From assembly GCA_002269645.1 (NCBI GenBank), contig NIVC01001113.1:1-64000 (forward strand): a DNA stretch of 64,000 bases, written 5' to 3'. This DNA comes from Macrostomum lignano. Taxonomy: Eukaryota. A program made the position numbers and the translations under genes. Each line of letters begins with the position of its first letter. Positions within the stretch are counted from its first letter, which is position 1. This document shows, in pieces, positions 6,301 through 48,581 of the stretch. The notes under the pieces were generated by a model, which ran no database searches, was not told the DNA's origin, and saw only the letters and a program-made list of their open reading frames with translations.

Positions 6301-9300
6301 GCAAGTCGCACAGCTTGTTCGAGGTCAAGTCCATCATCAGCTACACTGTTCGTCGCTCGTGCGTTCACAAGGGCAAGTGCACCGCAAAGTGCGTCAGACA
6401 CGTGGTTAGCAAGAAAAAGCCTTGCCCACCAGTCCCTACTCCGTGTAAAGTTAAGGCCGTGCTCAAGCGCTGCAAGAAGCACTCCGCCTACAAGTACTTG
6501 ATCGAGGTTTACTACAAGCGAATTCGCGGACGCTGTGTACCGCTGAAGCGTATCACGAAGAAGAGACTCCCATGCCGTAAGTTTAGTCTCTTGTTTTTGC
6601 AAACTATTTGTTATTTCAAACTGTAAGAAATGCAATTGTTCATTCAATTGCTGTTTGATTTATTTAAGCACTTTCACTAAATCTGTAACTTCTAAGTATT
6701 GTACCTGAGACATGTTTTCAGGGTGATGGGTTTCTTGTTCTTTCAGCCTTGTATTTTGTTTTCGATTCTTGAATCCAGAAGATTCAAAGTAATGAGATGA
6801 AACAATAGTTTTCGATTGAGCACTATAAAAAACTCTATTGACGAACGCAAAACTTTGTTTAACATAAGACCCATCTGTATGTGACGAAAAATAATAGAAT
6901 AGTTAATTAAGTTTCAGAAAATTTCTTTTCAAGGAAATCCAACTTATTGCAGAAGTTTTCGAGAGTATCTGAAAATTAATAACTGAAAATTTCGGTTTCG
7001 AGCTTAGGTTAAAACAAGGCAAGGAATGCACGACAGAGTGGACTTTGATAGTATAGTAAATATGATTAATAAATGAAATTATGTTTATGCCTTAGCTTCT
7101 GATCTTTTAAGCCTAGCTACCTTGAAATGCAGGGTAACGTCTGTAGACAACAAGGGCAAAATCGTTTAATAATTAGGCTTGATATTAGAAACGTACTACA
7201 AACCAAAATGCTTCTATCTGACGTCTCAATGGCGCCAATACAGCTTTCAATAAAGTGTACGAACGTTCTTTACTCGTGGCCAGCGAGAGGTGTGTTTTGT
7301 TGCTGCTGTCGTTATTGTTGTACAAACGATCTTTACTGATTACTTTTCTACCAGCATGAAGAGCTAAGAAAATTAGTAACAACCACTTTAGTACTTTCGC
7401 AGCCAGCACTAACTTTTCGAAAACAAAAAATGATATGACCTTACTCATAACTTATAATTTCAGCACCCCGACGGTGCCCGAAGTCGAGGACGACTACCAG
7501 CAACTGCACGAAGGGAGCCAAGCACAAGGTCACCACTACGATTTTCTACTCTGGTAAGATTGTGTGCAGCAAGAAGAAGCCGATCGTATGCCGACAGGTG
7601 TGCACAAAGCGAGTGACCAAGTCTGGTGTCCCGTGCATTCACATCGTGTGCGACGAGGCCAAGAAGGTCAAGCTTACCAAGTGCGGAGGTAAGAGGCGCT
7701 ACCGATCCGTCATCACTACCTGGAATACACGAGTCGGAAAGAAATGCAGGAAGCACAGGACCGTCAAGCACTATCCATGCCCAGTGGTTTGCCCGAAGGG
7801 GTCGAAGACCATCAAGCGAACTTCGTGCGGCAAGGGCAGGAAGTACCGGACTCTCACGATCGCGACTTCCACCGTTAAGAAGAGGTGCAGCGGCCGTATC
7901 TGCACACTGCACTGCATCCGCAAGCTGATCCACTCTCGCGTGTTGTGTCCGAAGCCGCCACATCGCTGCAGGAAGCCACGAAAGGTGCACACGCGATGCT
8001 CGGCTGGGCACAAGTACTCCTACACCACTACGTATTACTACAAGAAGAAGAAGGTTTGCACCGGTCTGGTTGTTCCGCCAAGTCGCACCTGCAGCAAGGT
8101 TGCCGACCTCGTGTTCGTTCTGGACTCTTCGACCAGCATTCACGACGCCGATTTTGCCAAAGAATCTCGCTTTGTTCAGCACATCGTTCGCAGGATGGGC
8201 GTATCTCCGACTGGCGTTCGCGTTGCTGTTGTCACTTATTCGACCAGACCGAAACTCGTGTTCAACTTGGACAAGTACAAAACCAAGTCGCAGGTTCTGG
8301 CCGCCATGTCGAAGCTTCCACGAGACGAGGGAATCACAATGACTTATGCGGCTATCGACCTTGTCAACAGTGACATCTACCCGAAGAGACGAGCTGGAGT
8401 CCCGTTCATTGTCGTGGTCATCACTGACGGCAAGAGCACGATGGGTGACCCCGTCGCCTCGGCTAAAGTCTTGAAGAAGAAGGGCGCCCGCTTTGTCTCT
8501 GTCGGAATCTACAACCCCGACCCAAGCGTGACCGACAAGATTAATCCGTAAGAATACATTTCTTAAACTGTATTACAGAACATAGGTTACCTGATTCAAA
8601 TAAGACATTATAAGCGAAGCATGCTTGCTTTCGAAATCTACTGCTGCAGGGCTGAACTAAAGGGCATCTCAAGCAAAGGAAGATTCTGGCGAGCCGGAAA
8701 CTTTAACAAGCTTGATTCCATCGTCAGCAGCGTCGTTCGGGAAGTGTGCACAGGTAGGAGAACGGACACATGCTAGATGCTGGTCTGATGCTTAATAACT
8801 TGTAATTTACAATTTACAACTTCAGACATGGGAAAATCAAAATCAAAGTCAGGAGGAAAACGGGTGTGCAAGATAATCTGCGTGAAGAAGCGCAAGATTT
8901 CTGCAAAGAAGATTTGCAGGAAGGACTGCTCGAGCAGGACTCTCATCCGTCACTGCAAGAAGCACAGGGCCTATCGCGTGTTTACTCGAGTCACCTACCG
9001 GTGGAACGGAAAGAAATGCGTTCCCAAGAGCCGGAAGGTCATCAAGAAGATCCGGTGCCGTAAGTAAATGCACTCGTGAAAAACGAGTATATTTATGCCT
9101 TTTGCACCTTTGTGCCCCAGACGTGACTTGCAACGCCATTGGCTCATGCTAAGAGAAGCCGTATCTAAATAATAGATGTTTCGTAACTATGCTTATATAG
9201 TGATTATTTATTCTGGCCTCGATTGCAGCTCCGAGAACTTGTCCGAAAGCCAAGATCATCCGCAAAGAGTGCAAGCCTGGCAGGGCGAAGAGCGTCACGA

Positions 9301-12300
9301 CGCACATCTTCTACACGTCGCGTGTGAAGTGCACGATGTCTCTGCCGCCTCGTTGCACGCAGCACTGCATCAAGAAGGTGAAGCGCTCGGCCGTTCCGTG
9401 CAAGAAAATCAAGTGCAAGGGCGACAAAGACCACGTGACCAAGTGCGGCGGCAGTCGTCGCTATCGCGTTGTCGTCACAATCAAGTACATCCAAGTAAAA
9501 GGCGTCTGCAAGAGGCGCAAGACCACCAAGCGCTATCCGTGTCCGGTCAAGTGCCCAAAGACTCAGACCATCATAAGGCCTTGCAAAAAGGGTCGCAAGT
9601 TCTCTGTGAAGTCCATCATCAGCTACACCGTTCGTCGCGCGTGCGTTCACAAGGGCAAGTGCACAGTGAAGTGCGTCAGACGAGTTCTGCGATCGCGAAA
9701 GCGGTGCAAAACGCGTCCGCCAGATCGTCGCTGCAAGCAGCCTCCGCCCTTCTGGACCAAGTGTCGCAAACACTCTGCATACAAGTACCAGATCAAGGCG
9801 CTCTACAGGAATGTTCGCGGAACTTGTGTCATCTACAAGCGAGAGACAATTGCCCGACTTCTTTGCCGTAAGTAGCTCGTTCCTTGACAAGTAGCAAGGG
9901 TAGCTAATCTACTCGTCAAAATAGAAGTTTCAAAACCAGGGTTTATATCTGCTTATTGAATTAATATTTTAGCACCTCGCAAGTGCCCGAAGACGAGAGT
10001 AACCAAAACGAAGTGCACAAAGGGAGTCAGGCACAAGGTCACCACTACGATTTTCTACTCTGGTAAGATTGTGTGCAGCAAGAAGAAGCCGATCGTATGC
10101 CGACAGGTGTGCACAAAGCGAGTGACCAAGTCTGGTGTCCCGTGCTTTCACATCGTGTGCGACGAGGCCAAGAAGGTCAAGCTTACCAAGTGCGGCGGTA
10201 AGAGGCGCTACCGATCCGTCATCACTACCTGGAATACACGAGTCGGAAAGAAGTGCAGGAAGCACAGGACCGTCAAGCACTATCCGTGCCCAGTGGTTTG
10301 CCCGAAGAGGTCCAAGACCATCAAGCGAACTTCGTGCGGCAAGGGCAGGAAGTACCGGACTCTCACGATCGCGACTTCCACCGTTAAGAAGAGGTGCAGC
10401 GGCCGTATCTGCACACTGCACTGCATCCGCAAGCTGATCCACTCTCGCGTGTTGTGTCCGAAGCCGCCACATCGCTGCAGGAAGCCGCGCAAGGTGCACG
10501 TCCGATGCTCGAAGAAGAACTCACACTCGTACATCATCACCTATTACTACGTGAAGAAGCGAGTGTGTCACCGTAAGTCCCAATGCCTAAAACGTTTTGC
10601 AACCAATTATTTTAGTTCGCAATGGTTTACAAGCATACCTTACTTTAAACGAATGCACAACTGTTTCTCAGGTGCTTTGAAGTCTGGAAAAGCGCGCCGC
10701 TGCAAGATTGTGTGCGTGAAGAAGCACAAGCGGTCAGCCAGGAAGCCGTGCAAGAAGCGCAAGTGCCGATACCAGCTATCCTACCACACCACCAAGTGTG
10801 TGCACAACTTCCGAACCATCACAACGAAGTACCGCACTCGGGTCCACGGACGCTGTGTCTGGCGACGAAAATCCGTGCGTCGCGTCCGCTGCTCTGGCTG
10901 CTCGTCCCACCAGATTCACTACCACAAGACGACGGTCGGCAGCAAGTGCAAGGCTGGACGCACGCAGACCTTCCTGAACTTCTACGAGTCGCGCAAGTAC
11001 AAAACCGGCTGGGTGTGTCACAAGAAGAAAGTCCAGGTGTCCATCATTAAGTGCAAGTGCAACAGGAAGCCTCTGCTGCTCCTGGACAAGAAGTGCCGCA
11101 AGGGCTACAGGAAGCTTACCAAGGTGGTGTTTATCGATCGCGGCGGCAAGTGCATTAGGAAGCAGACTGTCACTAAGAAAAAGTGCAAGATCATCAAAAT
11201 CCATTGCGATCCGGCAATGATTGTGAAGAAGTGCACTAAGCACGCGGCTTACCGACTGTTCCTGCAAATCAGCTACAGGCTGGTCGACGGAAAGTGCCGC
11301 AAACACCGCACAAGGATCGTCAAGAAGCAGCCTTGTCGTAAGTATTGATAATCATGCTTTTTAAGTACGCTCTTAAGTAAGTGTTCTAGTTTCCCTAAAT
11401 GATATCTCATTCTTTGATCAAAATGTAAACACAATGCAGCACCAAGACGCTGTCCGAAGGCCAAGACAATCCGCACAAAGTGCAAGCCGGGAGTCGTCAA
11501 GCGAGTCACGACGCACATCTTCTACACGTCGCATGTCAGGTGTACAAAGTCGAAGCGGCCTCGTTGCACGCAGCACTGCATCAAGAAGGTGAAGCGCTCG
11601 GCTGTTCCGTGCAAGAAAATCAAGTGCAAGAAGGACAAGGACCACGTGACAAAGTGCGGCGGCAGTCGTCGCTATCGTGTTGTCGTCACCATCAAGTACA
11701 CCGAAGTAAAAGGCATCTGCAAGAAGCACAAAACCACCAAGCGCTATCCGTGTCCGATCAAGTGCCCGAAGACTCAGGTCATCCGTAAACCCTGCTCCAA
11801 GGGCAAGTCGCACAGCTTGTTCGAGGTCAAGTCCATCATCAGCTACACTGTTCGTCGCTCGTGCGTTCACAAGGGCAAGTGCACCGCAAAGTGCGTCAGA
11901 CACGTGGTTAGCAAGAAAAAGCCTTGCCCACCAGTCCCTACTCCGTGTAAAGTTAAGGCCGTGCTCAAGCGCTGCAAGAAGCACTCCGCCTACAAGTACT
12001 TGATCGAGGTTTACTACAAGCGAATTCGCGGACGCTGTGTACCGCTGAAGCGTATCACGAAGAAGAGACTCCCATGCCGTAAGTTACTTGTATCTACTGT
12101 CTATATAACTAAACCTGCGGTTGTCAGTTAGTCAGGTGGAAGTTCAATGCTTTAAAATAGCTGGATGGATTTTACGGTTTCTGGACTTATGCTGGTGTCT
12201 GATTGAGCGTTAAAGAGTTATTTTCGTCGTGTCATAAAATTTTAAAAAACGTTTGCTTTACGGGAAGAAAAATTGCTTTTTTGCAAGGTCGGATTATAGT

Positions 12301-15300
12301 TGATCGGCTGTGACTGCAGAAAAGCTAGCATCTTCTTAGGTTGCATCAGAGTCAGAACTGAAGGTTTTAATTAATTTTCTTTTTTCACACTGGCAGTGAG
12401 GTGGTGATGGGATTTTCTTTTTCTTATAGGCATCTATAGCTTACACCTTCTGACTGACTGGCTGTGTACAATGCTTATGTGATCAATTGTACGTGCTCTG
12501 GTCCCTCTGACCGACTGGTTTGCGACTTGATATACTAAAACATTGACTGGCTAAATTACTATTCCAATCGAGATCGCATCATCACTCTGCCTTTGCTAGC
12601 TAGGCTCAGTGGGAGTGTTGACCATCATTGAGTGTAAATAGCAGTTCCTTTGTACACGGGAGGGAAACCTTTTTAAGAATTTAGGCTAAGAGAGCCATTG
12701 ATGGTTCGAGACCACCTCGTAGCGGATAATCACTGAAAAATGATTGAACGCCAGTGAAAAGGCGGGGAGGTACCATTATGCGCTGATCCTAGAAATTTAA
12801 TTTCTTTTTTATTGCGTCATTAATTTGTTTTTTACGAGTTTACTAATGCACCTGCCTTAGAACGCTTCGTTAATGCTAAACTAGTTTGCATCAATTGATG
12901 ATAGTGAGCGAGACTGTGAGATGCTCATGTGCAGTATGATATGAATGATCAGGGAATTGTGCTGAGGGGAATAGAGTAAATTATGCTGAGCTCGAATGAT
13001 GCTGAGCGGGAATGATGGTGAGCGGGAATGATGCTGAGCGGGAATGATGGTGAGCGGGAATGATGGTGAGCGGGAATGATGCTGAGCGGGAATGATGCTG
13101 AGCGGGAATGATGGTGAGCGGGAATGATGGTGAGCAGGAATGATGGTGAGCGGGAATGATGGTGAGCGGGAATGATGTGAGCGGAATGATGGTGAGCGGG
13201 AATGATGGTGAGCGGGAATGATGGTGAGCGGGAATGATGTTGAGCAGGAATGATGGTGAGCGGGAATGATGGTGAGCGGGAATGATGGTGAGCGGGAATG
13301 ATGGTGAGCGGGAATGATGGTGAGCGGGAATGATGCTGAGCGGGAATGATGGTGAGCGGGAATGATGCTGAGCGGGAATGATGGTGAGCGGGAATGATGG
13401 TGAGCGGGAATGATGGTGAGCGGGAATGATGCTGAGCGGGAATGATGGTGAGCGGGAATGATGGTGAGCGGGAATGATGGTGAGCGGGAATGATGCTGAG
13501 CGGGAATGATGGTGAGCGGGAATGATGGTGAGCGGGAATGATGGTGAGCGGGAATGATGGTGAGCGGGAATGATGGTGAGCGGGAATGATGGTGAGCGGG
13601 AATGATGGTGAGCGGGAATGATGGTGAGCGGGAATGATGGTGAGCGGGAATGATGGTGAGCGGGAATGATGGTGAGCGGGAATGATGGTGAGCGGGAATG
13701 ATGGTGAGCGGGAATGATGCTGAGCGGGAATGATGGTGAGCGGGAATGATGGTGAGCGGGAATGATGGTGAGCGGGAATGATGGTGAGCGGGAATGATGG
13801 TGAGCGGGAATGATGGTGAGCGGGAATGATGGTGAGCGGGAATGATGCTGAGCGGGAATGATGGTGAGCGGGAATGATGCTGAGCGGGAATGATGCTGAG
13901 TTGCTCTATGGGATTTCATTACCAAGTGCATATTACTTACTTATACATTGTTGAGTAGGGATGCTGAATGCTCTTTTAATGGTTGGGATTTCACTGCTTA
14001 AAATTCGACTCTTTGGATTTCCACCAAGTGGGATTCTACTGAGGAGATTCCCCTGAGAAATTTGACTAAGGGAAGGGATTCCATTCAAGGGATTCCACTG
14101 GGGATTCCACTGGAGATTTCACAGACCTGGGATTTTACTTTGCCGGTACATCGTAGCTCGATCGCTTTATTTTAAATGGTTTGTGCAGTAAGAGAATTTT
14201 TTGCTCTTATTCCTGTGCGATTGTGGCGCTTCTGATAAAAACTTATAAGATAAAAAAGCCTAAAAAACTTGTTTAATTCGAAGCTTTTTAGGTTCTCTGG
14301 GGGAATCAGCTTTTTCAGGCACTAGCTGTCAAGCCTATGTTGAAATTTTCAGTAGCAACCACTCCTAAGAAATGGTGAAGTTGTTTAAATTATTGTTTCA
14401 GACAAACTGGTTCACTCTATTTGTCTTGCTGTAAAAACTCTGATTAAAAGTTTATACTGGTCGACGGAAGCGCACTTTTAGCTCTTTATTTGCCACTGGT
14501 TGAGAAACTTCGGATTATGACATTAGGAACGAAGCTTTTTCTTAAGCAGTAGACTCAGTTAAAGAAAGAGTAGCTGATGTGAAATTTCGGAAAAGTATTT
14601 TAAACAGTTAGAATCGTTTCGGCCAATCATTTGGCACAACTGTTATAAATGGAAGCTACATATCAAAGTTTGTAACAACAATCTTAAGTCAAATCTCCAT
14701 CACACCGTCAAAATTTCATTGCATCGATATTTACCCTGACGAAAGCCCAACACATGGTTTTGAAAGGTCAGTTATTGCATTTTCGACCTTGTAAAGCAGC
14801 CCCATAAATGCTTAATATGTCAATGCAACAAAAAGTAAAATTTTCCTGTTTTTCGTACAGTTTCTCTCAGCAGGACACAAGGAATATTACACGTGCCTGC
14901 AAAATTCACATTCTACAGTAGTACGTGCAAACAACACAAGAAATTAGTTCGATAACAACAGCATTCTAATCAAATAAATCAGCATATCGCTTATGTTAAA
15001 AATTTCTAATTTCAGCACCCCGACGGTGCCCGAAGTCGAGGACGACTACCAGCAACTGTACAAAGGGAGCAAAGCACAAAGTCACAACCAAAGTTTTCTA
15101 CATTGGCAAGATCATCTGCCACAAAAGAAGTCCGAAAGTTTGTCACCAGCATTGCATCAAGCGAGTGACCAAGTCTGCTGTTCCTTGCGTTCACATCGTG
15201 TGCGACGAGGCCAAGAAGGTCAGTGTTACCAAGTGCGGCGGTAAGAGGCGCTACCGATCCGTCATCACTACCTGGAATACACGAGTCGGAAAGAAGTGCA

Positions 15301-18300
15301 GGAAGCACAGGACCGTCAAGCACTATCCATGCCCAGTGGTTTGCCCAAAGGGGTCGAAGACCATCAAGCGAACTTCGTGCGGCAAGGGCAGGAAGTACCG
15401 GACTCTCACGATCGCGACTTCCACCGTTAAGAAGAGGTGCAGCGGCCGTATCTGCACACTGCACTGCATCCGCAAGCTGATCCACTCTCGCGTGTTGTGT
15501 CCGAAGCCGCCACATCGCTGCAGGAGGCCACGCAAAGTGCGCGTTCGATGCTCAGCCGGACACATGTACTCCTACATCATCACCTATTACTACCAGCGAA
15601 AGCATTTGTGTCTAGGTAAAAGTTTTTTTTAATGTTTTAATATGATTAAAGCTTTACTAGACAATTTACTATTTTTACGACAATTAACCTAAAAAACACA
15701 ATTACTTCGTTCAAGGCAAATCATCAAAAGGTAAAGCGCATTGCAAAACAATCTGCGTGAAGAAGCGCAAGATTTCTGCAAAGAAGATTTGCAGGAAGGA
15801 CTGCTCGAGCAGGACTCTCATCCGTCACTGCAAGAAGCACAGGGCCTATCGCGTGTTTACTCGAGTCACCTACCGGTGGAACGGAAAGAAATGCGTTCCC
15901 AAGAGCCGGAAGGTCATCAAGAAGATCCGGTGCCGTAAGTAAATGCACTCGTGAAAAACGAGTATATTAATACCTTTTGCACCTTTGTGCCCCAGGCGTG
16001 ACTTGCAACGCCATTGGCGCATGTTAAGAGAAGCCGAATCCAAATATTAGATTATTCGTAACTATGCTAAGTGATTATTCGCTTTCGCCTTGATTGCAGC
16101 TCCGAGAACTTGTCCGAAAGCCAAGATCATCCGCAAAGAGTGCAAGCCTGGCAGGGCGAAGAGCGTCACGACGCACATCTTCTACACGTCGCGTGTGAAG
16201 TGCACGATGTCTCTGCCGCCTCGTTGCACGCAGCACTGCATCAAGAAGGTGAAGCGCTCGGCCGTTCCGTGCAAGAAAATCAAGTGCAAGGGCGACAAAG
16301 ACCACGTGACCAAGTGCGGCGGCAGTCGTCGCTATCGCGTTGTCGTCACAATCAAGTACATCCAAGTAAAAGGCGTCTGCAAGAGGCGCAAGACCACCAA
16401 GCGCTATCCGTGTCCGGTCAAGTGCCCAAAGACTCAGACCATCATAAGGCCTTGCAAAAAGGGTCGCAAGTTCTCTGTGAAGTCCATCATCAGCTACACC
16501 GTTCGTCGCGCGTGCGTTCACAAGGGCAAGTGCACAGTGAAGTGCGTCAGACGAGTTCTGCGATCGCGAAAGCGGTGCAAAACGCGTCCGCCAGATCGTC
16601 GCTGCAAGCAGCCTCCGCCCTTCTGGACCAAGTGTCGCAAACACTCTGCATACAAGTACCAGATCAAGGCGCTCTACAGGAATGTTCGCGGAACTTGTGT
16701 CATCTACAAGCGAGAGACAATTGCCCGACTTCTTTGCCGTAAGTAGCTCGTTCCTTGACAAGTAGCAAGGGTAGCTAATCTACTCGTCAAAATAGAAGTT
16801 TCAAAACCAGGGTTTATATCTGCTTATTGAATTAATATTTTAGCACCTCGCAAGTGCCCGAAGACGAGAGTAACCAAAACGAAGTGCACAAAGGGAGTCA
16901 GGCACAAGGTCACCACTACGATTTTCTACTCTGGTAAGATTGTGTGCAGCAAGAAGAAGCCGATCGTATGCCGACAGGTGTGCACAAAGCGAGTGACCAA
17001 GTCTGGTGTCCCGTGCTTTCACATCGTGTGCGACGAGGCCAAGAAGGTCAAGCTTACCAAGTGCGGCGGTAAGAGGCGCTACCGATCCGTCATCACTACC
17101 TGGAATACACGAGTCGGAAAGAAGTGCAGGAAGCACAGGACCGTCAAGCACTATCCGTGCCCAGTGGTTTGCCCGAAGAGGTCCAAGACCATCAAGCGAA
17201 CTTCGTGCGGCAAGGGCAGGAAGTACCGGACTCTCACGATCGCGACTTCCACCGTTAAGAAGAGGTGCAGCGGCCGTATCTGCACACTGCACTGCATCCG
17301 CAAGCTGATCCACTCTCGCGTGTTGTGTCCGAAGCCGCCACATCGCTGCAGGAAGCCGCGCAAGGTGCACGTCCGATGCTCGAAGAAGAACTCACACTCG
17401 TACATCATCACCTATTACTACGTGAAGAAGCGAGTGTGTCACCGTAAGTCCCAATGCCTAAAACGTTTTGCAACCAATTATTTTAGTTCGCAATGGTTTA
17501 CAAGCATACCTTACTTTAAACGAATGCACAACTGTTTCTCAGGTGCTTTGAAGTCTGGAAAAGCGCGCCGCTGCAAGATTGTGTGCGTGAAGAAGCACAA
17601 GCGGTCAGCCAGGAAGCCGTGCAAGAAGCGCAAGTGCCGATACCAGCTATCCTACCACACCACCAAGTGTGTGCACAACTTCCGAACCATCACAACGAAG
17701 TACCGCACTCGGGTCCACGGACGCTGTGTCTGGCGACGAAAATCCGTGCGTCGCGTCCGCTGCTCTGGCTGCTCGTCCCACCAGATTCACTACCACAAGA
17801 CGACGGTCGGCAGCAAGTGCAAGGCTGGACGCACGCAGACCTTCCTGAACTTCTACGAGTCGCGCAAGTACAAAACCGGCTGGGTGTGTCACAAGAAGAA
17901 AGTCCAGGTGTCCATCATTAAGTGCAAGTGCAACAGGAAGCCTCTGCTGCTCCTGGACAAGAAGTGCCGCAAGGGCTACAGGAAGCTTACCAAGGTGGTG
18001 TTTATCGATCGCGGCGGCAAGTGCATTAGGAAGCAGACTGTCACTAAGAAAAAGTGCAAGATCATCAAAATCCATTGCGATCCGGCAATGATTGTGAAGA
18101 AGTGCACTAAGCACGCGGCTTACCGACTGTTCCTGCAAATCAGCTACAGGCTGGTCGACGGAAAGTGCCGCAAACACCGCACAAGGATCGTCAAGAAGCA
18201 GCCTTGTCGTAAGTATTGATAATCATGCTTTTTAAGTACGCTCTTAAGTAAGTGTTCTAGTTTCCCTAAATGATATCTCATTCTTTGATCAAAATGTAAA

Positions 18301-24300: not shown

Positions 24301-27300
24301 GGTAAGATTGTGTGCAGCAAGAAGAAGCCGATCGTATGCCGACAGGTGTGCACAAAGCGAGTGACCAAGTCTGGTGTCCCGTGCTTTCACATCGTGTGCG
24401 ACGAGGCCAAGAAGGTCAAGCTTACCAAGTGCGGCGGTAAGAGGCGCTACCGATCCGTCATCACTACCTGGAATACACGAGTCGGAAAGAAGTGCAGGAA
24501 GCACAGGACCGTCAAGCACTATCCGTGCCCAGTGGTTTGCCCGAAGAGGTCCAAGACCATCAAGCGAACTTCGTGCGGCAAGGGCAGGAAGTACCGGACT
24601 CTCACGATCGCGACTTCCACCGTTAAGAAGAGGTGCAGCGGCCGTATCTGCACACTGCACTGCATCCGCAAGCTGATCCACTCTCGCGTGTTGTGTCCGA
24701 AGCCGCCACATCGCTGCAGGAAGCCGCGCAAGGTGCACGTCCGATGCTCGAAGAAGAACTCACACTCGTACATCATCACCTATTACTACGTGAAGAAGCG
24801 AGTGTGTCACCGTAAGTCCCAATGCCTAAAACGTTTTGCAACCAATTATTTTAGTTCGCAATGGTTTACAAGCATACCTTACTTTAAACGAATGCACAAC
24901 TGTTTCTCAGGTGCTTTGAAGTCTGGAAAAGCGCGCCGCTGCAAGATTGTGTGCGTGAAGAAGCACAAGCGGTCAGCCAGGAAGCCGTGCAAGAAGCGCA
25001 AGTGCCGATACCAGCTATCCTACCACACCACCAAGTGTGTGCACAACTTCCGAACCATCACAACGAAGTACCGCACTCGGGTCCACGGACGCTGTGTCTG
25101 GCGACGAAAATCCGTGCGTCGCGTCCGCTGCTCTGGCTGCTCGTCCCACCAGATTCACTACCACAAGACGACGGTCGGCAGCAAGTGCAAGGCTGGACGC
25201 ACGCAGACCTTCCTGAACTTCTACGAGTCGCGCAAGTACAAAACCGGCTGGGTGTGTCACAAGAAGAAAGTCCAGGTGTCCATCATTAAGTGCAAGTGCA
25301 ACAGGAAGCCTCTGCTGCTCCTGGACAAGAAGTGCCGCAAGGGCTACAGGAAGCTTACCAAGGTGGTGTTTATCGATCGCGGCGGCAAGTGCATTAGGAA
25401 GCAGACTGTCACTAAGAAAAAGTGCAAGATCATCAAAATCCATTGCGATCCGGCAATGATTGTGAAGAAGTGCACTAAGCACGCGGCTTACCGACTGTTC
25501 CTGCAAATCAGCTACAGGCTGGTCGACGGAAAGTGCCGCAAACACCGCACAAGGATCGTCAAGAAGCAGCCTTGTCGTAAGTATTGATAATCATGCTTTT
25601 TAAGTACGCTCTTAAGTAAGTGTTCTAGTTTCCCTAAATGATATCTCATTCTTTGATCAAAATGTAAACACAATGCAGCACCAAGACGCTGTCCGAAGGC
25701 CAAGACAATCCGCACAAAGTGCAAGCCGGGAGTCGTCAAGCGAGTCACGACGCACATCTTCTACACGTCGCATGTCAGGTGTACAAAGTCGAAGCGGCCT
25801 CGTTGCACGCAGCACTGCATCAAGAAGGTGAAGCGCTCGGCTGTTCCGTGCAAGAAAATCAAGTGCAAGAAGGACAAGGACCACGTGACAAAGTGCGGCG
25901 GCAGTCGTCGCTATCGTGTTGTCGTCACCATCAAGTACACCGAAGTAAAAGGCATCTGCAAGAAGCACAAAACCACCAAGCGCTATCCGTGTCCGATCAA
26001 GTGCCCGAAGACTCAGGTCATCCGTAAACCCTGCTCCAAGGGCAAGTCGCACAGCTTGTTCGAGGTCAAGTCCATCATCAGCTACACTGTTCGTCGCTCG
26101 TGCGTTCACAAGGGCAAGTGCACCGCAAAGTGCGTCAGACACGTGGTTAGCAAGAAAAAGCCTTGCCCACCAGTCCCTACTCCGTGTAAAGTTAAGGCCG
26201 TGCTCAAGCGCTGCAAGAAGCACTCCGCCTACAAGTACTTGATCGAGGTTTACTACAAGCGAATTCGCGGACGCTGTGTACCGCTGAAGCGTATCACGAA
26301 GAAGAGACTCCCATGCCGTAAGTTACTTGTATCTACTGTCTATATAACTAAACCTGCGGTTGTCAGTTAGTCAGGTGGAAGTTCAATGCTTTAAAATAGC
26401 TGGATGGATTTTACGGTTTCTGGACTTATGCTGGTGTCTGATTGAGCGTTAAAGAGTTATTTTCGTCGTGTCATAAAATTTTAAAAAACGTTTGCTTTAC
26501 GGGAAGAAAAATTGCTTTTTTGCAAGGTCGGATTATAGTTGATCGGCTGTGACTGCAGAAAAGCTAGCATCTTCTTAGGTTGCATCAGAGTCAGAACTGA
26601 AGGTTTTAATTAATTTTCTTTTTTCACACTGGCAGTGAGGTGGTGATGGGATTTTCTTTTTCTTATAGGCATCTATAGCTTACACCTTCTGACTGACTGG
26701 CTGTGTACAATGCTTATGTGATCAATTGTACGTGCTCTGGTCCCTCTGACCGACTGGTTTGCGACTTGATATACTAAAACATTGACTGGCTAAATTACTA
26801 TTCCAATCGAGATCGCATCATCACTCTGCCTTTGCTAGCTAGGCTCAGTGGGAGTGTTGACCATCATTGAGTGTAAATAGCAGTTCCTTTGTACACGGGA
26901 GGGAAACCTTTTTAAGAATTTAGGCTAAGAGAGCCATTGATGGTTCGAGACCACCTCGTAGCGGATAATCACTGAAAAATGATTGAACGCCAGTGAAAAG
27001 GCGGGGAGGTACCATTATGCGCTGATCCTAGAAATTTAATTTCTTTTTTATTGCGTCATTAATTTGTTTTTTACGAGTTTACTAATGCACCTGCCTTAGA
27101 ACGCTTCGTTAATGCTAAACTAGTTTGCATCAATTGATGATAGTGAGCGAGACTGTGAGATGCTCATGTGCAGTATGATATGAATGATCAGGGAATTGTG
27201 CTGAGGGGAATAGAGTAAATTATGCTGAGCTCGAATGATGCTGAGCGGGAATGATGGTGAGCGGGAATGATGCTGAGCGGGAATGATGGTGAGCGGGAAT

Positions 27301-30300
27301 GATGGTGAGCGGGAATGATGCTGAGCGGGAATGATGCTGAGCGGGAATGATGGTGAGCGGGAATGATGGTGAGCAGGAATGATGGTGAGCGGGAATGATG
27401 GTGAGCGGGAATGATGTTGAGCAGGAATGATGGTGAGCGGGAATGATGGTGAGCGGGAATGATGGTGAGCGGGAATGATGTTGAGCAGGAATGATGGTGA
27501 GCGGGAATGATGCTGAGCGGGAATGATGGTGAGCGGGAATGATGGTGAGCGGGAATGATGGTGAGCGGGAATGATGGTGAGCGGGAATGATGGTGAGCGG
27601 GAATGATGGTGAGCGGGAATGATGGTGAGCGGGAATGATGGTGAGCGGGAATGATGGTGAGCGGGAATGATGGTGAGCGGGAATGATGGTGAGCGGGAAT
27701 GATGGTGAGCGGGAATGATGGTGAGCGGGAATGATGCTGAGCGGGAATGATGGTGAGCGGGAATGATGCTGAGCGGGAATGATGCTGAGTTGCTCTATGG
27801 GATTTCATTACCAAGTGCATATTACTTACTTATACATTGTTGAGTAGGGATGCTGAATGCTCTTTTAATGGTTGGGATTTCACTGCTTAAAATTCGACTC
27901 TTTGGATTTCCACCAAGTGGGATTCTACTGAGGAGATTCCCCTGAGAAATTTGACTAAGGGAAGGGATTCCATTCAAGGGGATTCCACTGGGGATTCCAC
28001 TGGAGATTTCACAGACCTGGGATTTTACTTTGCCGGTACATCGTAGCTCGATCGCTTTATTTTAAATGGTTTGTGCAGTAAGAGAATTTTTTGCTCTTAT
28101 TCCTGTGCGATTGTGGCGCTTCTGATAAAAACTTATAAGATAAAAAAGCCTAAAAAACTTGTTTAATTCGAAGCTTTTTAGGTTCTCTGGGGAATCAGCT
28201 TTTTCAGGCACTAGCTGTCAAGCCTATGTTGAAATTTTCAGTAGCAACCACTCCTAAGAAATGGTGAAGTTGTTTAAATTATTGTTTCAGACAAACTGGT
28301 TCACTCTATTTGTCTTGCTGTAAAAACTCTGATTAAAAGTTTATACTGGTCGACGGAAGCGCACTTTTAGCTCTTTATTTGCCACTGGTTGAGAAACTTC
28401 GGATTATGACATTAGGAACGAAGCTTTTTCTTAAGCAGTAGACTCAGTTAAAGAAAGAGTAGCTGATGTGAAATTTCGGAAAAGTATTTTAAACAGTTAG
28501 AATCGTTTCGGCCAATCATTTGGCACAACTGTTATAAATGGAAGCTACATATCAAAGTTTGTAACAACAATCTTAAGTCAAATCTCCATCACACCGTCAA
28601 AATTTCATTGCATCGATATTTACCCTGACGAAAGCCCAACACATGGTTTTGAAAGGTCAGTTATTGCATTTTCGACCTTGTAAAGCAGCCCCATAAATGC
28701 TTAATATGTCAATGCAACAAAAAGTAAAATTTTCCTGTTTTTCGTACAGTTTCTCTCAGCAGGACACAAGGAATATTACACGTGCCTGCAAAATTCACAT
28801 TCTACAGTAGTACGTGCAAACAACACAAGAAATTAGTTCGATAACAACAGCATTCTAATCAAATAAATCAGCATATCGCTTATGTTAAAAATTTCTAATT
28901 TCAGCACCCCGACGGTGCCCGAAGTCGAGGACGACTACCAGCAACTGTACAAAGGGAGCAAAGCACAAAGTCACAACCAAAGTTTTCTACATTGGCAAGA
29001 TCATCTGCCACAAAAGAAGTCCGAAAGTTTGTCACCAGCATTGCATCAAGCGAGTGACCAAGTCTGCTGTTCCTTGCGTTCACATCGTGTGCGACGAGGC
29101 CAAGAAGGTCAGTGTTACCAAGTGCGGCGGTAAGAGGCGCTACCGATCCGTCATCACTACCTGGAATACACGAGTCGGAAAGAAGTGCAGGAAGCACAGG
29201 ACCGTCAAGCACTATCCATGCCCAGTGGTTTGCCCAAAGGGGTCGAAGACCATCAAGCGAACTTCGTGCGGCAAGGGCAGGAAGTACCGGACTCTCACGA
29301 TCGCGACTTCCACCGTTAAGAAGAGGTGCAGCGGCCGTATCTGCACACTGCACTGCATCCGCAAGCTGATCCACTCTCGCGTGTTGTGTCCGAAGCCGCC
29401 ACATCGCTGCAGGAGGCCACGCAAAGTGCGCGTTCGATGCTCAGCCGGACACATGTACTCCTACATCATCACCTATTACTACCAGCGAAAGCATTTGTGT
29501 CTAGGTAAAAGTTTTTTTTAATGTTTTAATATGATTAAAGCTTTACTAGACAATTTACTATTTTTACGACAATTAACCTAAAAAACACAATTACTTCGTT
29601 CAAGGCAAATCATCAAAAGGTAAAGCGCATTGCAAAACAATCTGCGTGAAGAAGCGCAAGATTTCTGCAAAGAAGATTTGCAGGAAGGACTGCTCGAGCA
29701 GGACTCTCATCCGTCACTGCAAGAAGCACAGGGCCTATCGCGTGTTTACTCGAGTCACCTACCGGTGGAACGGAAAGAAATGCGTTCCCAAGAGCCGGAA
29801 GGTCATCAAGAAGATCCGGTGCCGTAAGTAAATGCACTCGTGAAAAACGAGTATATTAATACCTTTTGCACCTTTGTGCCCCCAGGCGTGACTTGCAATG
29901 CCATTGGCGCATGTTAAGAGAAGCCGAATCCAAATATTAGATTATTCGTAACTATGCTAAGTGATTATTCGCTTTCGCCTTGATTGCAGCTCCGAGAACT
30001 TGTCCGAAAGCCAAGATCATCCGCAAAGAGTGCAAGCCTGGCAGGGCGAAGAGCGTCACGACGCACATCTTCTACACGTCGCGTGTGAAGTGCACGATGT
30101 CTCTGCCGCCTCGTTGCACGCAGCACTGCATCAAGAAGGTGAAGCGCTCGGCTGTTCCGTGCAAGAAAATCAAGTGCAAGAAGGACAAGGACCACGTGAC
30201 AAAGTGCGGCGGCAGTCGTCGCTATCGTGTTGTCGTCACCATCAAGTACACCGAAGTAAAAGGCGTCTGCAAGAGGCGCAAGACCACCAAGCGCTATCCG

Positions 30301-33300
30301 TGTCCGGTCAAGTGCCCAAAGACTCAGACCATCATAAGGCCTTGCAAAAAGGGTCGCAAGTTCTCTGTGAAGTCCATCATCAGCTACACCGTTCGTCGCG
30401 CGTGCGTTCACAAGGGCAAGTGCACAGTGAAGTGCGTCAGACGAGTTCTGCGATCGCGAAAGCGGTGCAAAACGCGTCCGCCAGATCGTCGCTGCAAGCA
30501 GCCTCCGCCCTTCTGGACCAAGTGTCGCAAACACTCTGCATACAAGTACCAGATCAAGGCGCTCTACAGGAATGTTCGCGGAACTTGTGTCATCTACAAG
30601 CGAGAGACAATTGCCCGACTTCTTTGCCGTAAGTAGCTCGTTCCTTGACAAGTAGCAAGGGTAGCTAATCTACTCGTCAAAATAGAAGTTTCAAAACCAG
30701 GGTTTATATCTGCTTATTGAATTAATATTTTAGCACCTCGCAAGTGCCCGAAGACGAGAGTAACCAAAACGAAGTGCACAAAGGGAGTCAGGCACAAGGT
30801 CACCACTACGATTTTCTACTCTGGTAAGATTGTGTGCAGCAAGAAGAAGCCGATCGTATGCCGACAGGTGTGCACAAAGCGAGTGACCAAGTCTGGTGTC
30901 CCGTGCTTTCACATCGTGTGCGACGAGGCCAAGAAGGTCAAGCTTACCAAGTGCGGCGGTAAGAGGCGCTACCGATCCGTCATCACTACCTGGAATACAC
31001 GAGTCGGAAAGAAGTGCAGGAAGCACAGGACCGTCAAGCACTATCCGTGCCCAGTGGTTTGCCCGAAGAGGTCCAAGACCATCAAGCGAACTTCGTGCGG
31101 CAAGGGCAGGAAGTACCGGACTCTCACGATCGCGACTTCCACCGTTAAGAAGAGGTGCAGCGGCCGTATCTGCACACTGCACTGCATCCGCAAGCTGATC
31201 CACTCTCGCGTGTTGTGTCCGAAGCCGCCACATCGCTGCAGGAAGCCGCGCAAGGTGCACGTCCGATGCTCGAAGAAGAACTCACACTCGTACATCATCA
31301 CCTATTACTACGTGAAGAAGCGAGTGTGTCACCGTAAGTCCCAATGCCTAAAACGTTTTGCAACCAATTATTTTAGTTCGCAATGGTTTACAAGCATACC
31401 TTACTTTAAACGAATGCACAACTGTTTCTCAGGTGCTTTGAAGTCTGGAAAAGCGCGCCGCTGCAAGATTGTGTGCGTGAAGAAGCACAAGCGGTCAGCC
31501 AGGAAGCCGTGCAAGAAGCGCAAGTGCCGATACCAGCTATCCTACCACACCACCAAGTGTGTGCACAACTTCCGAACCATCACAACGAAGTACCGCACTC
31601 GGGTCCACGGACGCTGTGTCTGGCGACGAAAATCCGTGCGTCGCGTCCGCTGCTCTGGCTGCTCGTCCCACCAGATTCACTACCACAAGACGACGGTCGG
31701 CAGCAAGTGCAAGGCTGGACGCACGCAGACCTTCCTGAACTTCTACGAGTCGCGCAAGTACAAAACCGGCTGGGTGTGTCACAAGAAGAAAGTCCAGGTG
31801 TCCATCATTAAGTGCAAGTGCAACAGGAAGCCTCTGCTGCTCCTGGACAAGAAGTGCCGCAAGGGCTACAGGAAGCTTACCAAGGTGGTGTTTATCGATC
31901 GCGGCGGCAAGTGCATTAGGAAGCAGACTGTCACCAAGAAAAAGTGTCCTCCTGTTAAATGCTTTAACAAGAAAGTCCTTCGCAAGTGTAGGAAGCACTC
32001 TGCGTATCAATACGTTGTTAGGGTTTATTACCGGGCAGTTCGTGGTCGCTGTGTGTCCTATAAGTCCAAGATAACCAAGAAGCTTCCTTGTCGTAAGTAC
32101 ATTTTATAAACGTTTACTTTTTGTTAGTTGTTTACTTGTTTGTTAAAAGCCATACATAATTTGGCCTTTTTTTCAGCCCCGGTTCCTTGTCCAAAGTCGA
32201 AGAAGATTGTGAGGGGGTGCAGGAAAGGTGTGATAAATCGGGTAACGACGACTGTTTTCTACGTGGCTAAGATATCTTGCAGCAAGGGTCGTCGCCCTGT
32301 ATGCCGGCAAAAGTGCATCCGACGTGTAACACGTGCTGCTGTTCCATGTGGTGTCCCGCGTCGCTGTATGAAAAAGAAGATTAAACATGTTAGTAAGTGC
32401 GGCGGAAAAAGGCGCTACCGGTCTATTACAACAATATGGTTTTCTGGCAGATACCCGAAATGTAGAAAGCACAAGATTGTTAAACACGTTCCGTGTCCTG
32501 TTGACTGCAAGAAGCCAAAGGTCGTCAAGATCTCATGCGTTGGTTCTAGAGAATTCCGTGAAAAGCGCACGACCACATATTCTGTGAAGAAATCATGCCG
32601 CAAGTCAATCTGCGTTCTCCGCTGCGTTAGGCATGTAGTTGTTTCCCGCGTGCCTTGCGTCGCTCCAGTCGTTTGCCGTCCTCGCAGAAGAGTTTTGCCG
32701 TGCTCGAAGCGTTCGGCCTATAGGAAAATAATTGAGATATTGTCAAAGTTCAAGAAAGGCGAATGCCGAGTTTACCGCAAGCGTATTGTGAAGAAAATCC
32801 CTTGTCGTAAGTTTAGCTAGAAATTCTATTTTAACTTGTTTCGATTTTGCGATTTTTCTACCAAAATATATTCTTTTTATGAAATTTTGTTTCAGCCTGC
32901 AAACGCGGTCGAACTGTCATCCAGAAGACTTGTCGCAAAGGTTTCCGCAAAGTCATCAAGACCGTTTACATTCGCGTCCGTGGAGTTTGCCGTGCTAAGA
33001 GCGTCGTGCTCCGTCGCATCCGGTGCCCGGAGCCGCCTCGATGCAGTCGTAGCTATTACGTTGTCTCCACTTGCTTCCATGGAGTGCGTCGACTGTTGTT
33101 TGTATCGAGCAGGCGGGTCAAGTCAGCAACCGGGCGGTTCACGTGCATCACCAAGTCAACAGCTGTTGCGTATTTCGACTGCCTTCCAGGTTAGCTATGA
33201 CTATCTAGATGCCAGTGAAACATGTTTTTGTGCTACTTGTTTATAAATATTTGACTATTTTTAAGCTAAAAATTCATTATTTTCAGATTGCCGTCACGGC

Positions 33301-33606
33301 GTACAGAAGAAGCTGGTCCTTGGATGCAAATGCGTTCGCAGTCACAGGAACCTGTACCAGATCACATTCACTGCCAGACGATCAAAGTGCTTACATAGCG
33401 TGAAGCTTATGGGTCAGGTCAGCTGCAACGACTGTTTGAGCTACTTGAAACGCTGGAAGCACTGGATGCTTCGACTCAAGGTAAAAAAACCAAAGAAGGT
33501 CGTCAAGGTCGTTAAGCCAAAGAAGGTGATCAAACACAAAAAGGTAATCAAGCACAAGAAGAAGAAGAATAGGCGCGCTCTTCTTGGCTTCAGCTATGCC
33601 GGTTAA
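347..33606 (+). CDS. Giant Lys/Arg/Cys-rich modular protein with three vWA domains (likely extracellular; 5' end apparently upstream of the window)
   Basis: GT-AG exons chained in frame by hand: A 347-1240, B 1353-1523, C 1613-2218, D 2323-3055, E 3158-3261, F 3334-3567, G 3732-4366, H 4472-5071, I 5171-5836, J 5939-6576; K1 7464-8547, E 8650-8753, F 8826-9059, G 9229-9867, H 9973-10572, I 10672-11337, J 11440-12078; K2 15016-15615, F' 15716-15934, G 16100-16738, H 16844-17443, I 17543-18208, J 18311-18949; K2 22384-22983, F' 23084-23302, G 23468-24106, H 24212-24811, I 24911-25576, J 25679-26317; K2 28905-29504, F' 29605-29823, G 29990-30628, H 30734-31333, I' 31433-32092; L 32177-32806, M 32896-33189, N 33287-33606 (TAA). 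Phases match at every junction. The first G and J copies carry -4 and -1 nt indels (probable consensus errors). No signal peptide is seen in exon A, which starts at a tttcag acceptor. Confidence 0.88.
538..993 (+). other. vWA domain 1 (MIDAS degenerate), within exon A
   Basis: ELILVMQASQD...VRVSVVLFS...IGDAL...KMLIVITSG...ILVIGVG follows the vWA strand/helix pattern. DxSxS is replaced by QASQD and the TDG aspartate by TSG. Confidence 0.8.
2610..3261 (+). other. vWA domain 2 (intact MIDAS), split by intron 3056-3157
   Basis: DLVFVLDSSTSI...VRVAVVTYS...EGITMTYAAI...VVVITDGKS...VSVGI|PAELKGISS. DxSxS, T and D MIDAS residues are all present. Confidence 0.92.
8102..8753 (+). other. vWA domain 3 (duplicate of domain 2)
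   Basis: Appears identical in sequence to 2610-3261 at offset +5492. Confidence 0.92.
12994..13900. repeat. Intronic 16-bp minisatellite (GATGGTGAGCGGGAAT)n, about 57 units
   Basis: Direct reading. Variants are GCT, GTT+CAGG and one 14-nt unit. Confidence 0.97.
14730..14795 (+). ncRNA. Candidate type I hammerhead ribozyme (copy 1; also 22098-22163 and 28619-28684)
   Basis: CTGACGA (14736-42) and GAAA (14762-65) cores. Helix II is AAGCC/GGTTTT with one bulge, helix III is A-GGTC/GACC-T, helix I is TTTAC(C)/GTAAA with one bulge, and the putative cleavage triplet is CUU. Confidence 0.45.
19865..21267. repeat. Intronic 16-bp minisatellite, about 88 units
   Basis: Same unit and same flanks as 12994-13900. 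Confidence 0.97.
27233..27789. repeat. Intronic 16-bp minisatellite, about 35 units
   Basis: Same unit and same flanks. Confidence 0.97.
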
Positions 33607-38082: not shown

Positions 38083-38939
38083 TTTTTCTGAAGCGTACCT
38101 TTCTTCCAGGGAACCTGGTCGAAAAATGTTTAAATCGGAAATGTCTTCCAGTTTCGCTTTTTTCTAGTCAAAGAAAACTCGTAGTCCGATTAAAGATGAA
38201 GTGCCTATAGACCCGTGCAAATATCCTAACTGTGTTTACTAAGCACTATATATTTGACTGTTTGCATTGCAAATCAATGGATTGGTAAATGGGATAATGG
38301 GAACTAAATTGAATTGCTGAGTACTCGACTCACAAAGTAAATAGTGCGTGGAAAAAAATAAAACAATCGACCGTAGATATGTACAATTTTTGTTTTCATT
38401 CAGTTCATTCAGTTTCGAATCAATGAGTCTTTGAGATACGAATTGAAGCGGGAAGAGACTACTATATTAGACTATGAAATCGTTTAAACACTCTACACAC
38501 GGTACATTTGTACATGTACAGGACATTTTGTTCCTCATTCTAGGAATTATTGAGTGTTGACAATGTTGACAAAGGCCCGCCGAGGTTTGCCCGCAATGCT
38601 TTTTTACTGCAGCGCATTTTAGCGCACTGCAGCGAAGATTTTGTCTGCATTGCCTCCCCAATGCTTAGTAAATAAGGATGAGTTAATAAAGAGTAGTAGT
38701 TAATAAAGAGATTTACCGATCAAAACGTTTTGATAGTAAATGCATATCAAATTCAATTTTTTCTTGGTGGTACGCTCGTATTCAGTTAACTGTACATGCA
38801 GGGGTACTGCATTGGTGAGTAAACTATTAATTAATGCATTTATGTCGCTTTGTCCCCCAAATCTCTTTTTAAAACCTACTGTACGCGGTACTATAAGCAT
38901 TGGGGGGGGGGGGGCAATGCAGGCAAAATCTGCCTAGGA

Positions 38940-42496: not shown

Positions 42497-42895
<399 letters not shown>

Positions 42896-48503: not shown

Positions 48504-48581
48504 TAGTTCACGTTGTTCTCAATCCCATTCCACTATACATGTAGTTTTTATCTAATGTGACTAAGCCAGGTGCTTTTAGTG

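What the first reader, a model, noticed from the sequence alone, without database searches (positions are those of the whole stretch)
8875..31945. Recent tandem amplification of a six-exon, 1,121-aa coding unit
Seen: K2-F'-G-H-I-J totals 3,363 coding nt and recurs with periods of 6871, 7368 and 6521 bp. Copies differ by only a few SNPs (e.g. GCAACGCC versus GCAATGCC in the F'-G intron) plus satellite length. Inference: the gene is an actively expanding and contracting array, and protein length is probably polymorphic in steps of about 1,100 aa among individuals, as in mucin- and spidroin-type genes but with intron-containing units.
Basis: partly seen in the sequence, partly recalled or inferred. 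Interest (0 to 1): 0.7.

Follow-up and report, generated by a model that had tools for sequence, protein, structure and literature searches.

The report
Amplified exon cassette in flatworm gene
A very large secreted, positively charged, cysteine-rich protein gene of the flatworm Macrostomum lignano contains a six-exon block copied head-to-tail almost perfectly; this is a clear but not unprecedented case of a gene lengthening by unequal recombination.

Summary
The window holds 3' about 33.6 kb of a Macrostomum lignano gene (Mlig_3_7 locus tags BOX15_Mlig000187g2/g3). It encodes a secreted protein of roughly 6,900 aa with VWA domains and K/R/C-rich modules.

- **The unit:** six phase-1 exons (K2-F'-G-H-I-J) total 3,363 nt, or 1,121 aa. 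There are two complete copies, a third truncated in exon I, and a preceding VWA-type unit that shares F-G-H-I-J.
- **Similarity:** two full units differ at 3 of about 5,950 non-satellite bases, and their exons are identical. Period differences come from a 16-bp intronic minisatellite with 58, 89 and 36 copies.
- **Independent assembly:** a paralogous copy (0.6-0.8% diverged) has the same unit types in a different order and number, with a 15-copy satellite. The window's three K2 units share about 25 differences against that copy. The amplification or homogenisation therefore postdates the split.
- **Recombination:** a ~100-bp J-to-G conversion tract is present in the last unit.
- **Expression:** published mass spectrometry detected peptides from these exons, including K2.

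Polymorphism among individuals is untested, and the exact copy number depends on one assembly that has local consensus errors. This is a new member of a known kind, comparable to LPA KIV-2, the NEB triplicate and the Flag silk gene.

The parts
347..3261 (+). Upstream unique exons of the gene. Exon a (VWA) 347-1240, b 1353-1523, c 1613-2218, d+VWA 2323-3055, x 3158-3261. The start codon and signal peptide lie about 4.7 kb upstream of the window.
   Evidence: Pfam VWA E=1.9e-29. Splice sites. 100% aa identity to UniProt A0A1I8JHM6 (P0007), which begins with a signal peptide. L002 aligns to window 1-6972 starting at L002 14713, with the gene start at L002 10001.
3334..6576 (+). Unit U0 (body of the first VWA-type unit A0): F 3334-3567, G 3732-4366, H 4472-5071, I 5171-5836, J 5939-6576. 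In this assembly G is 4 nt short and J is 1 nt short.
   Evidence: The 'deletions' sit exactly on sites that vary between copies, or in an A4 run. They are absent from the same locus in Mlig_3_7 (L002) and from P0007, so they are probably consensus errors.
7464..12078 (+). Unit U1 (A type, 3,966 nt = 1,322 aa): K1+VWA 7464-8547, x 8650-8753, F 8826-9059, G 9229-9867, H 9973-10572, I 10672-11337, J 11440-12078. The high-identity array starts at 8867, inside exon F.
   Evidence: (VWA E=3e-31). 100% aa identity to P0001, P0007 and P0008 modules.
12979..13900 (+). Intronic 16-bp minisatellite S1 (AATGATGGTGAGCGGG, 58 units) in the J-to-K2 intron.
   Evidence: TRF; variant map.
15016..18949 (+). 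Unit U2 (B type, complete): K2 15016-15615, F' 15716-15934, G 16100-16738, H 16844-17443, I 17543-18208, J 18311-18949. Total 3,363 nt = 1,121 aa.
19850..21267 (+). Minisatellite S2 (89 units). It carries an internal duplication of a variant block: the first copy is S3-like and the second is S1-like.
22384..26317 (+). Unit U3 (B type, complete): K2 22384-22983, F' 23084-23302, G 23468-24106, H 24212-24811, I 24911-25576, J 25679-26317. All exons are 100% identical to U2.
27218..27789 (+). Minisatellite S3 (36 units).
28905..32092 (+). Unit U4 (B type, truncated): K2 28905-29504, F' 29605-29823, G 29990-30628, H 30734-31333, and the terminal variant exon I' 31433-32092. Identity with the other units ends at 31946.
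   Evidence: The I' tail matches the ends of P0001 and P0008 100%.
30153..30253 (+). Gene-conversion tract inside exon G of U4. All 10 diagnostic sites are J-type, flanked by G-type sites.
32177..33606 (+). Unique 3' exons: L 32177-32806 (a single module of the same kind), then putative M 32896-33189 and putative last exon N 33287-33606 with the stop codon.
   Evidence: Splice sites. Exon L peptides VPCVAPVVCRPR and SITTIWFSGR appear in published mass spectrometry. M and N are inferred from frame and splice sites only.

Best explanation
The region is the repetitive core of one very large M. lignano gene. The protein is secreted and polycationic (K 18.6%, R 12.3%, C 9.3%). It is built from VWA domains and lineage-specific modules of about 200 aa with about 20 conserved cysteines each.

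Every module exon is flanked by phase-1 introns, so any whole-unit gain or loss keeps the reading frame.

Two old unit types exist. Type A is K1+VWA-x-F-G-H-I-J (1,322 aa). Type B is K2-F'-G-H-I-J (1,121 aa). Their heads are diverged: K1 versus K2 has dS of about 0.28, and the introns that follow exon J are unrelated. Their G-H-I-J bodies are kept identical by unequal crossing-over and gene conversion.

In the haplotype or subgenome sampled here, the B unit was amplified to three tandem copies very recently. The amplification postdates the split from the paralogous locus, most likely through unequal homologous exchange between misaligned units. The 16-bp minisatellite in the B intron changes length independently.

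Shown: the anatomy, the open frame, the identity levels, the conversion tract, the different arrangement at the paralogous locus, and translation of the exons. Inferred: the recombination mechanism, its recency in absolute time, and the protein's role as a cross-linked, polyanion-binding extracellular scaffold (mucus or adhesive secretion).
For: - Repeats and periods.
- Exon model, splice sites and open frame.
- U2 versus U3 differ at 1 + 2 sites outside the satellite, and all B exons are identical.
- Conserved cysteines across modules and dN/dS of 0.3-0.45 between old paralogous exons.
- The A and B introns after exon J share no similarity.
- The Mlig_3_7 locus L001 has A0-B-A-A', with 0.62-0.76% substitutions in unique flanks.
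- All three window B copies share about 25 differences against L001's B copy.
- Locus-specific variants are shared by all copies within a locus.
- J-to-G conversion tract.
- L002 is the same locus (1 substitution in 3,371 bp), and its contig ends inside the array.
- Peptides from K2, G, H, I, J, L and VWA exons occur in footprint and tail mass spectrometry in PMC6410801.
- The transcript is abundant (TPM about 345) and not region-specific in positional RNA-seq.
- Signal peptide in P0004, P0006 and P0007.
- The DV1 line is reported as highly inbred, with subgenomes diverged by more than 1% (bioRxiv 10.1101/2023.04.19.537444). Three copies that are near-identical yet distinct are therefore unlikely to be alleles or subgenomes strung together.
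Against: - The B x 3 arrangement is seen only in this window. The one other assembly of the same locus (L002) breaks just after U0.
- The window carries consensus errors of the mixed-read type in U0. Polishing with multi-mapped reads may therefore have exaggerated the identity between copies.
- M. lignano assemblies are reported to contain collapsed or expanded haplovariants and chimeric scaffolds.
- No read data were available, so copy number is unverified.
- The function is inferred. Pfam finds only VWA, and fold searches found no significant relative.
Confidence: 0.8

Rival explanations
1. Assembly artefact. The real locus has one B unit, and the assembler traversed the repeat cycle several times or strung haplotype or subgenome variants of one unit in tandem (over-expansion).
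For: - The window has mixed-read consensus errors in U0.
- The literature reports expanded or collapsed haplovariants and 36% chimeric scaffold length in Mlig_3_7.
- No second assembly confirms B x 3.
- The other locus has a single B unit.
Against: - The three copies carry distinct, internally structured satellite maps in exact 16-bp register, plus private SNPs/indels and a private conversion tract.
- They are about 10 times more similar to one another than to the other subgenomic copy, so they are not S/L1/L2 copies. Within-subgenome heterozygosity in the inbred line is reported as negligible.
- A false cycle would require reads too short to span the 2.3-3.2-kb shared body.
Confidence: 0.13
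2. An old array rather than a recent amplification. The B copies are ancient duplicates kept near-identical by continuous gene conversion (concerted evolution), with copy number stable and fixed.
For: - Concerted evolution clearly acts here. G-H-I-J bodies are identical across old A and B unit types, and they share locus-specific variants.
- A conversion tract is visible.
Against: - Identity between B units extends through all introns and about 2.7 kb of B-specific sequence, with only 2-3 differences.
- The paralogous locus has one B and 2-3 A units instead, so unit number did change after the split.
- Conversion alone does not explain the different unit order.
Confidence: 0.07

Closest known systems
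Human LPA kringle IV type 2 repeat (established knowledge, not tested here)
   Same: A multi-exon cassette of several kb, introns included, is repeated head-to-tail in frame. Units are near-identical, and the number of units sets the protein length. Unequal homologous recombination is the accepted mechanism.
   Different: LPA has two exons and about 114 aa per 5.5-kb unit, with documented population copy-number polymorphism. Here each 6.5-7.4-kb unit has six exons and 1,121 aa, two unit types are interleaved, and polymorphism is untested. The protein folds are unrelated.
Nebulin (NEB) triplicate region and the spider flagelliform silk (Flag) gene with iterated exon-intron units (established knowledge)
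   Same: Blocks of several exons are duplicated or triplicated at about 99% identity inside a giant structural-protein gene. Introns are homogenised together with exons, which indicates concerted evolution.
   Different: The proteins differ: a muscle thin-filament ruler and a silk, versus a secreted cationic Cys-rich VWA protein. Here an intronic minisatellite varies between units, and paralogous subgenomic loci show alternative unit orders.
M. lignano adhesion proteins Mlig-ap1 and Mlig-ap2 (PMC6410801)
   Same: Same animal. All are giant secreted repeat-rich proteins. Mlig-ap1 is K/R-rich and Cys-rich, and Mlig-ap2 has 46 repeats of 221-255 aa. All were detected in footprint mass spectrometry.
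   Different: This is not the same gene. Its motifs are absent from the published ap1/ap2 sequences, and it has VWA domains but no vWD, C8, TIL, EGF, lectin or TSP1 domains. Its transcript is not tail-restricted.
Mucin PTS VNTRs and spidroin repeats
   Same: These are secreted structural proteins whose length is set by tandem repeats, and they are prone to unequal exchange.
   Different: Those repeats are short, low-complexity and lie within single large exons. Here the repeat is a 1,121-aa set of folded disulfide-rich modules split over six exons with introns.

Membership tests
Multi-exon cassette coding tandem repeat (LPA KIV-2 / NEB-triplicate type) | Head-to-tail units, each containing two or more exons with their introns | tested here: met
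   Six exons per unit. Units lie at 15016-18949, 22384-26317 and 28905-32092.
Multi-exon cassette coding tandem repeat (LPA KIV-2 / NEB-triplicate type) | Unit coding length is a multiple of 3 and exon phases are symmetrical, so unit gain or loss keeps the frame | tested here: met
   3,363 nt per unit. All introns are phase 1, and the conceptual translation is open.
Multi-exon cassette coding tandem repeat (LPA KIV-2 / NEB-triplicate type) | Near-identity of units, including introns | tested here: met
   3 differences in about 5,950 non-satellite bp between U2 and U3.
Multi-exon cassette coding tandem repeat (LPA KIV-2 / NEB-triplicate type) | Copy number varies among individuals | not testable with these tools
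   Only indirect evidence: unit number and order differ between this locus and the paralogous locus or other assemblies.
VWA-domain extracellular proteins | Significant match to the Pfam VWA domain | tested here: met
   PF00092 E=1.9e-29 (337-1245) and 3.3e-31 (7466-8548). A DxSxS-type motif (DSSTS) is visible in the sequence.
Mlig-ap1 / Mlig-ap2 flatworm adhesive proteins | Sequence identity with, or the domain architecture of, the published proteins (vWD/C8/TIL, C-lectin, EGF for ap1; vWD, TIL, LDL, TSP1 for ap2) | tested here: not met
   Five characteristic 6-8-mers are absent from the supplement that prints the ap1/ap2 sequences. Pfam finds only VWA. Architecture is described.
Midkine/pleiotrophin or TSR-like heparin-binding beta domains | Significant structural match of the modelled module | tested here: inconclusive
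   Whole-module model (pLDDT 79): best PDB hit is pleiotrophin at E=0.46, TM 0.18-0.25. The 58-aa sub-repeat model (pLDDT 87) gave only generic beta-meander hits with E above 0.1.
Mucin-type PTS VNTR / spidroin repeat | Short low-complexity repeats (Pro/Thr/Ser-rich or Gly/Ala-rich) within large exons | tested here: not met
   Composition is K/R/C/V/T-rich with about 20 invariant cysteines per module, and the units are interrupted by introns.

The most novel reading that the evidence does not exclude
After the recent genome multiplication of M. lignano, the paralogous copies of this gene independently amplified alternative cassettes. One copy amplified the VWA-less B unit, and the other amplified the VWA-containing A unit. 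The animal would then make isoforms of a giant polycationic secreted scaffold with different length and VWA valency. The array would still be changing copy number within laboratory lines and wild populations.
Probability: 0.3. Interest if true: 0.6.

Novelty: new member of a known kind. Interest (0 to 1): 0.4.

Why it matters
The locus documents, base by base, how a giant extracellular protein gene grows. Symmetrical phase-1 exons allow whole cassettes to be gained or lost. Unequal exchange and short conversion tracts homogenise some parts and not others. Paralogous loci in a neopolyploid diverge structurally while staying more than 99% identical in sequence.

The gene product is abundant, lineage-restricted and present in published footprint proteomes of a model organism for temporary bioadhesion, yet no characterisation of it was found. 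It is therefore a concrete candidate for functional work on flatworm mucus or adhesive secretions.

The locus is also a useful stress test for assembly quality in this difficult genome.

Tried and rejected
1. **Pfam on all module exons:** no family apart from VWA.
2. **Homology searches:** a word-indexed search and an exhaustive profile search of 1.84 billion representatives found only M. lignano models plus one 60%-identical exon from unidentified Logan runs. No wider family was found.
3. **AlphaFold models plus Foldseek against PDB**: all-beta long hairpins with no significant relative. The pleiotrophin/midkine lead was not reproduced with the sub-repeat.
4. **Identity with Mlig-ap1 or Mlig-ap2:** rejected.
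5. **P0001 as a 'collapsed' version of this array:** rejected once P0008 and L001 showed that it belongs to a differently ordered paralogous locus.
6. **Hybrid exons in the NCBI model P0004** (G/J, K2/H, J/G, H/K1): probably annotation artefacts. The underlying DNA (L001) is collinear with normal exons.
7. **Real frameshifts in U0:** rejected in favour of consensus error.
8. **Full-text searches for the transcript or locus identifiers:** nothing found. P0001 itself is not on record in the contig index.
9. **Homology between the A-type and B-type introns that follow exon J:** none.
Full report
**What the sequence shows**

A self-BLAST of the window finds long direct repeats:
- 8867-13900 ~ 15742-20771 (99.27%)
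- 12979-20421 ~ 20346-27789 (99.83%)
- 20696-25424 ~ 27218-31946 (99.37%)
- an upstream pair outside the finding, 2490-6583 ~ 7981-12085 (99.66%, period 5,491)

Tandem Repeats Finder places a 16-bp minisatellite, AATGATGGTGAGCGGG, at 12979-13900, 19850-21267 and 27218-27789. Its length differences account exactly for the periods 6871, 7368 and 6521/6522.

**Exon model**

The + strand carries open frames that are 36-46% K+R+C. Each is bounded by AG| and |GTAAGT-type sites, and every intron is phase 1.

In unit 2 the exons are K2 15016-15615, F' 15716-15934, G 16100-16738, H 16844-17443, I 17543-18208 and J 18311-18949. Together they are 3,363 nt, or 1,121 aa, with no stop codon.

All exon copies were located. 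There are five G and H exons, five I exons (the last a variant, I'), four J exons, three K2 exons and one K1+VWA exon. The layout is A0 (d/VWA-x-F-G-H-I-J), A (K1/VWA-x-F-G-H-I-J, 1,322 aa), B, B, B' (K2-F'-G-H-I'), then the unique exons L, M and N.

**How similar the copies are**

- U2 and U3 differ at one site before the satellite and two after it, out of about 5,950 bp. All B exons are identical.
- U1 (A type) differs from the B units only within 8872-9220, which covers the 3' part of exon F and the F-G intron. From 9221 to 12978 the copies are identical.
- The heads are old. K1 versus K2 is 88% identical at the nucleotide level with dS 0.28, and G versus J has dS 0.59. dN/dS values are 0.3-0.45.
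- The introns that follow exon J in A and B units share no detectable similarity.

The G-H-I-J body is therefore homogenised across old unit types (concerted evolution), while whole B units are very young copies.

**Organism and gene**

All homologues are from Macrostomum lignano:
- PAA94323.1 (BOX15_Mlig000187g2) and PAA46257.1 (g3)
- UniProt A0A1I8JHM6, A0A1I8JGY7 and A0A1I8JI62, all named 'VWFA domain-containing protein'

Their N-termini carry a signal peptide. The window starts about 4.7 kb downstream of the start codon.

Adding the upstream part gives a predicted protein of roughly 6,900 aa. This figure is my arithmetic.

Pfam recognises only the VWA domains. The modules share about 20 invariant cysteines. 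AlphaFold models them as strings of long disulfide-stapled beta-hairpins, with pLDDT 79 and 87. Foldseek finds no significant relative.

An exhaustive profile search found nothing outside M. lignano except one hit. That hit is a 60%-identical F-G-H exon series in three Logan contigs from unidentified runs. All cysteines and the exon order are conserved there.

**Expression**

- The gene is not Mlig-ap1 or Mlig-ap2.
- Its peptides are listed in the footprint and tail mass-spectrometry tables of PMC6410801, under transcript RNA1509_167_1 (= RNA815_108 = RNA1310_280.1).
- The listed peptides include:
  - K2-specific SAVPCVHIVCDEAK
  - G SVTTHIFYTSR
  - J VTTHIFYTSHVR and GKSHSLFEVK
  - I TQTFLNFYESR
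  - L VPCVAPVVCRPR
  - VWA peptides
- The transcript is abundant, at TPM about 345.
- Positional RNA-seq classes it as not region-specific, with similar normalised counts in head-only fragments and whole worms. It is therefore not confined to the tail adhesive organs.
- I infer, but did not test, a body-wide secretory source (mucus or rhabdite-type glands) and a role as a cationic, disulfide- and VWA-cross-linked scaffold that binds polyanions.

**Independent assemblies**

Two contigs came from Mlig_3_7 (GCA_002269645.1):

- **L002** matches window 1-3374 with one substitution in 3,371 bp, so it is the same locus. It continues from U0 into the A-type intron as the window does, and then the contig ends inside the array.
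- **L001** differs by 0.62-0.76% substitutions in the unique flanks, so it is a paralogous (subgenomic) copy. Its array is A0-B-A-A', with four G exons at periods of 6192, 5501 and 5502. It has a single B unit, whose satellite has only 15 repeats.

UniProt A0A1I8JGY7 shows (K2)-F'-G-H-I-J followed by three VWA-type units, the last ending in I'. Unit order and number therefore differ among the copies of this gene.

The three B copies in the window share all of the about 25 differences against L001's B copy. Within the G-H-I-J body, several variants are fixed in all copies of one locus and absent from the other. Both observations show that amplification or homogenisation happened within each locus after the two diverged.

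**Direct traces of recombination**

- Exon G of U4 carries a patch at 30153-30253 in which all ten diagnostic sites are J-type, flanked by G-type sites. This is a short ectopic conversion tract.
- The minisatellite variant maps share both ends. S2 contains an internal block duplication whose two copies resemble S3 and S1 respectively.

**Assembly caveats**

- In U0, every 1-2-nt 'deletion' falls exactly on a site where the other copies differ, or in an A4 run. These deletions frameshift exons G and J.
- They are absent from L002 and from A0A1I8JHM6. They are therefore most likely consensus errors from mixed reads.
- This shows that polishing in the array was imperfect. It may have exaggerated the identity between copies.
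- The literature also warns of collapsed or expanded haplovariants in M. lignano assemblies, and describes three subgenomes that are 1-2% diverged in a highly inbred line.
- Those same facts argue against over-expansion. Copies that differ by 0.05% and carry distinct satellites cannot be the diverged subgenomes. Within-subgenome heterozygosity is reported as negligible.
- I put the probability that at least two tandem B units are real at about 0.8-0.85. The exact number remains unverified.

**Verdict**

A recent in-frame amplification and a dynamic array are well supported by comparison with the paralogous locus. Polymorphism among individuals is untested.

The phenomenon belongs to a known kind: multi-exon coding cassettes such as LPA KIV-2, the NEB triplicate region and the Flag silk gene. 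These comparisons rest on established knowledge and were not tested here.

What is new is the gene itself. It is an uncharacterised, abundant, lineage-specific, polycationic VWA protein that is present in footprint proteomes.

Noticed in passing
window 3601-3978 and 6228 (unit U0, exons G 3732-4366 and J 5939-6576): The apparent frameshifting 1-2-nt deletions coincide exactly with sites that vary between repeat copies, or lie in an A4 run. They are absent from the same locus in Mlig_3_7 (L002). This is the signature of a consensus built from mixed reads, so the assembly is locally unreliable.
   Followed up: yes
window 12979-13900, 19850-21267, 27218-27789: Each 16-bp satellite unit contains TG|GTGAGC on the sense strand. 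The J-to-K2 intron therefore carries 36-89 tandem 5'-splice-site-like motifs about 0.9 kb downstream of the real donor. Whether they act as decoys or have any effect on splicing is unknown.
   Followed up: no
window 30153-30253: Exon G of the last unit carries a clean J-to-G ectopic gene-conversion tract (10 of 10 diagnostic sites). The tract is absent from all other G copies and from the paralogous locus.
   Followed up: yes
L001 (GCA_002269645.1 NIVC01000012.1, 1231024-1276085, reversed) 14884-41482: The paralogous copy of the gene has units in the order A0-B-A-A' and a 15-unit satellite. Its NCBI gene model PAA94323.1 joins halves of paralogous exons (G/J, K2/H, J/G, H/K1). This is probably an annotation artefact from collapsed transcripts.
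   Followed up: partly
L003 141-1935 (Logan SRR31628392; also L004 and L005): A 60%-identical F-like, G-like and H-like exon series with the same order, short introns and all cysteines conserved. It probably represents the orthologue in another macrostomid. The source organism could not be identified.
   Followed up: partly
window 35692-38163, minus strand: The neighbouring gene encodes a major-facilitator-superfamily transporter. Pfam matches MFS_1 at E=1e-18 and Sugar_tr at E=3e-14, over at least three exon-like open frames.
   Followed up: partly
window 41022-41897, 42497-42895, 48271-49510, 53340-54632: Other simple repeats lie downstream: a 12-bp satellite (about 74 copies), a perfect (TGTC)100, a purine-rich GA block and, about 4 kb further on, a pyrimidine-rich TC block of opposite strand polarity. 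An open frame at 51800-52189 (minus strand) looks by eye like the C-terminus of a mariner/Tc1 transposase, but it has no Pfam hit at E<0.01.
   Followed up: no
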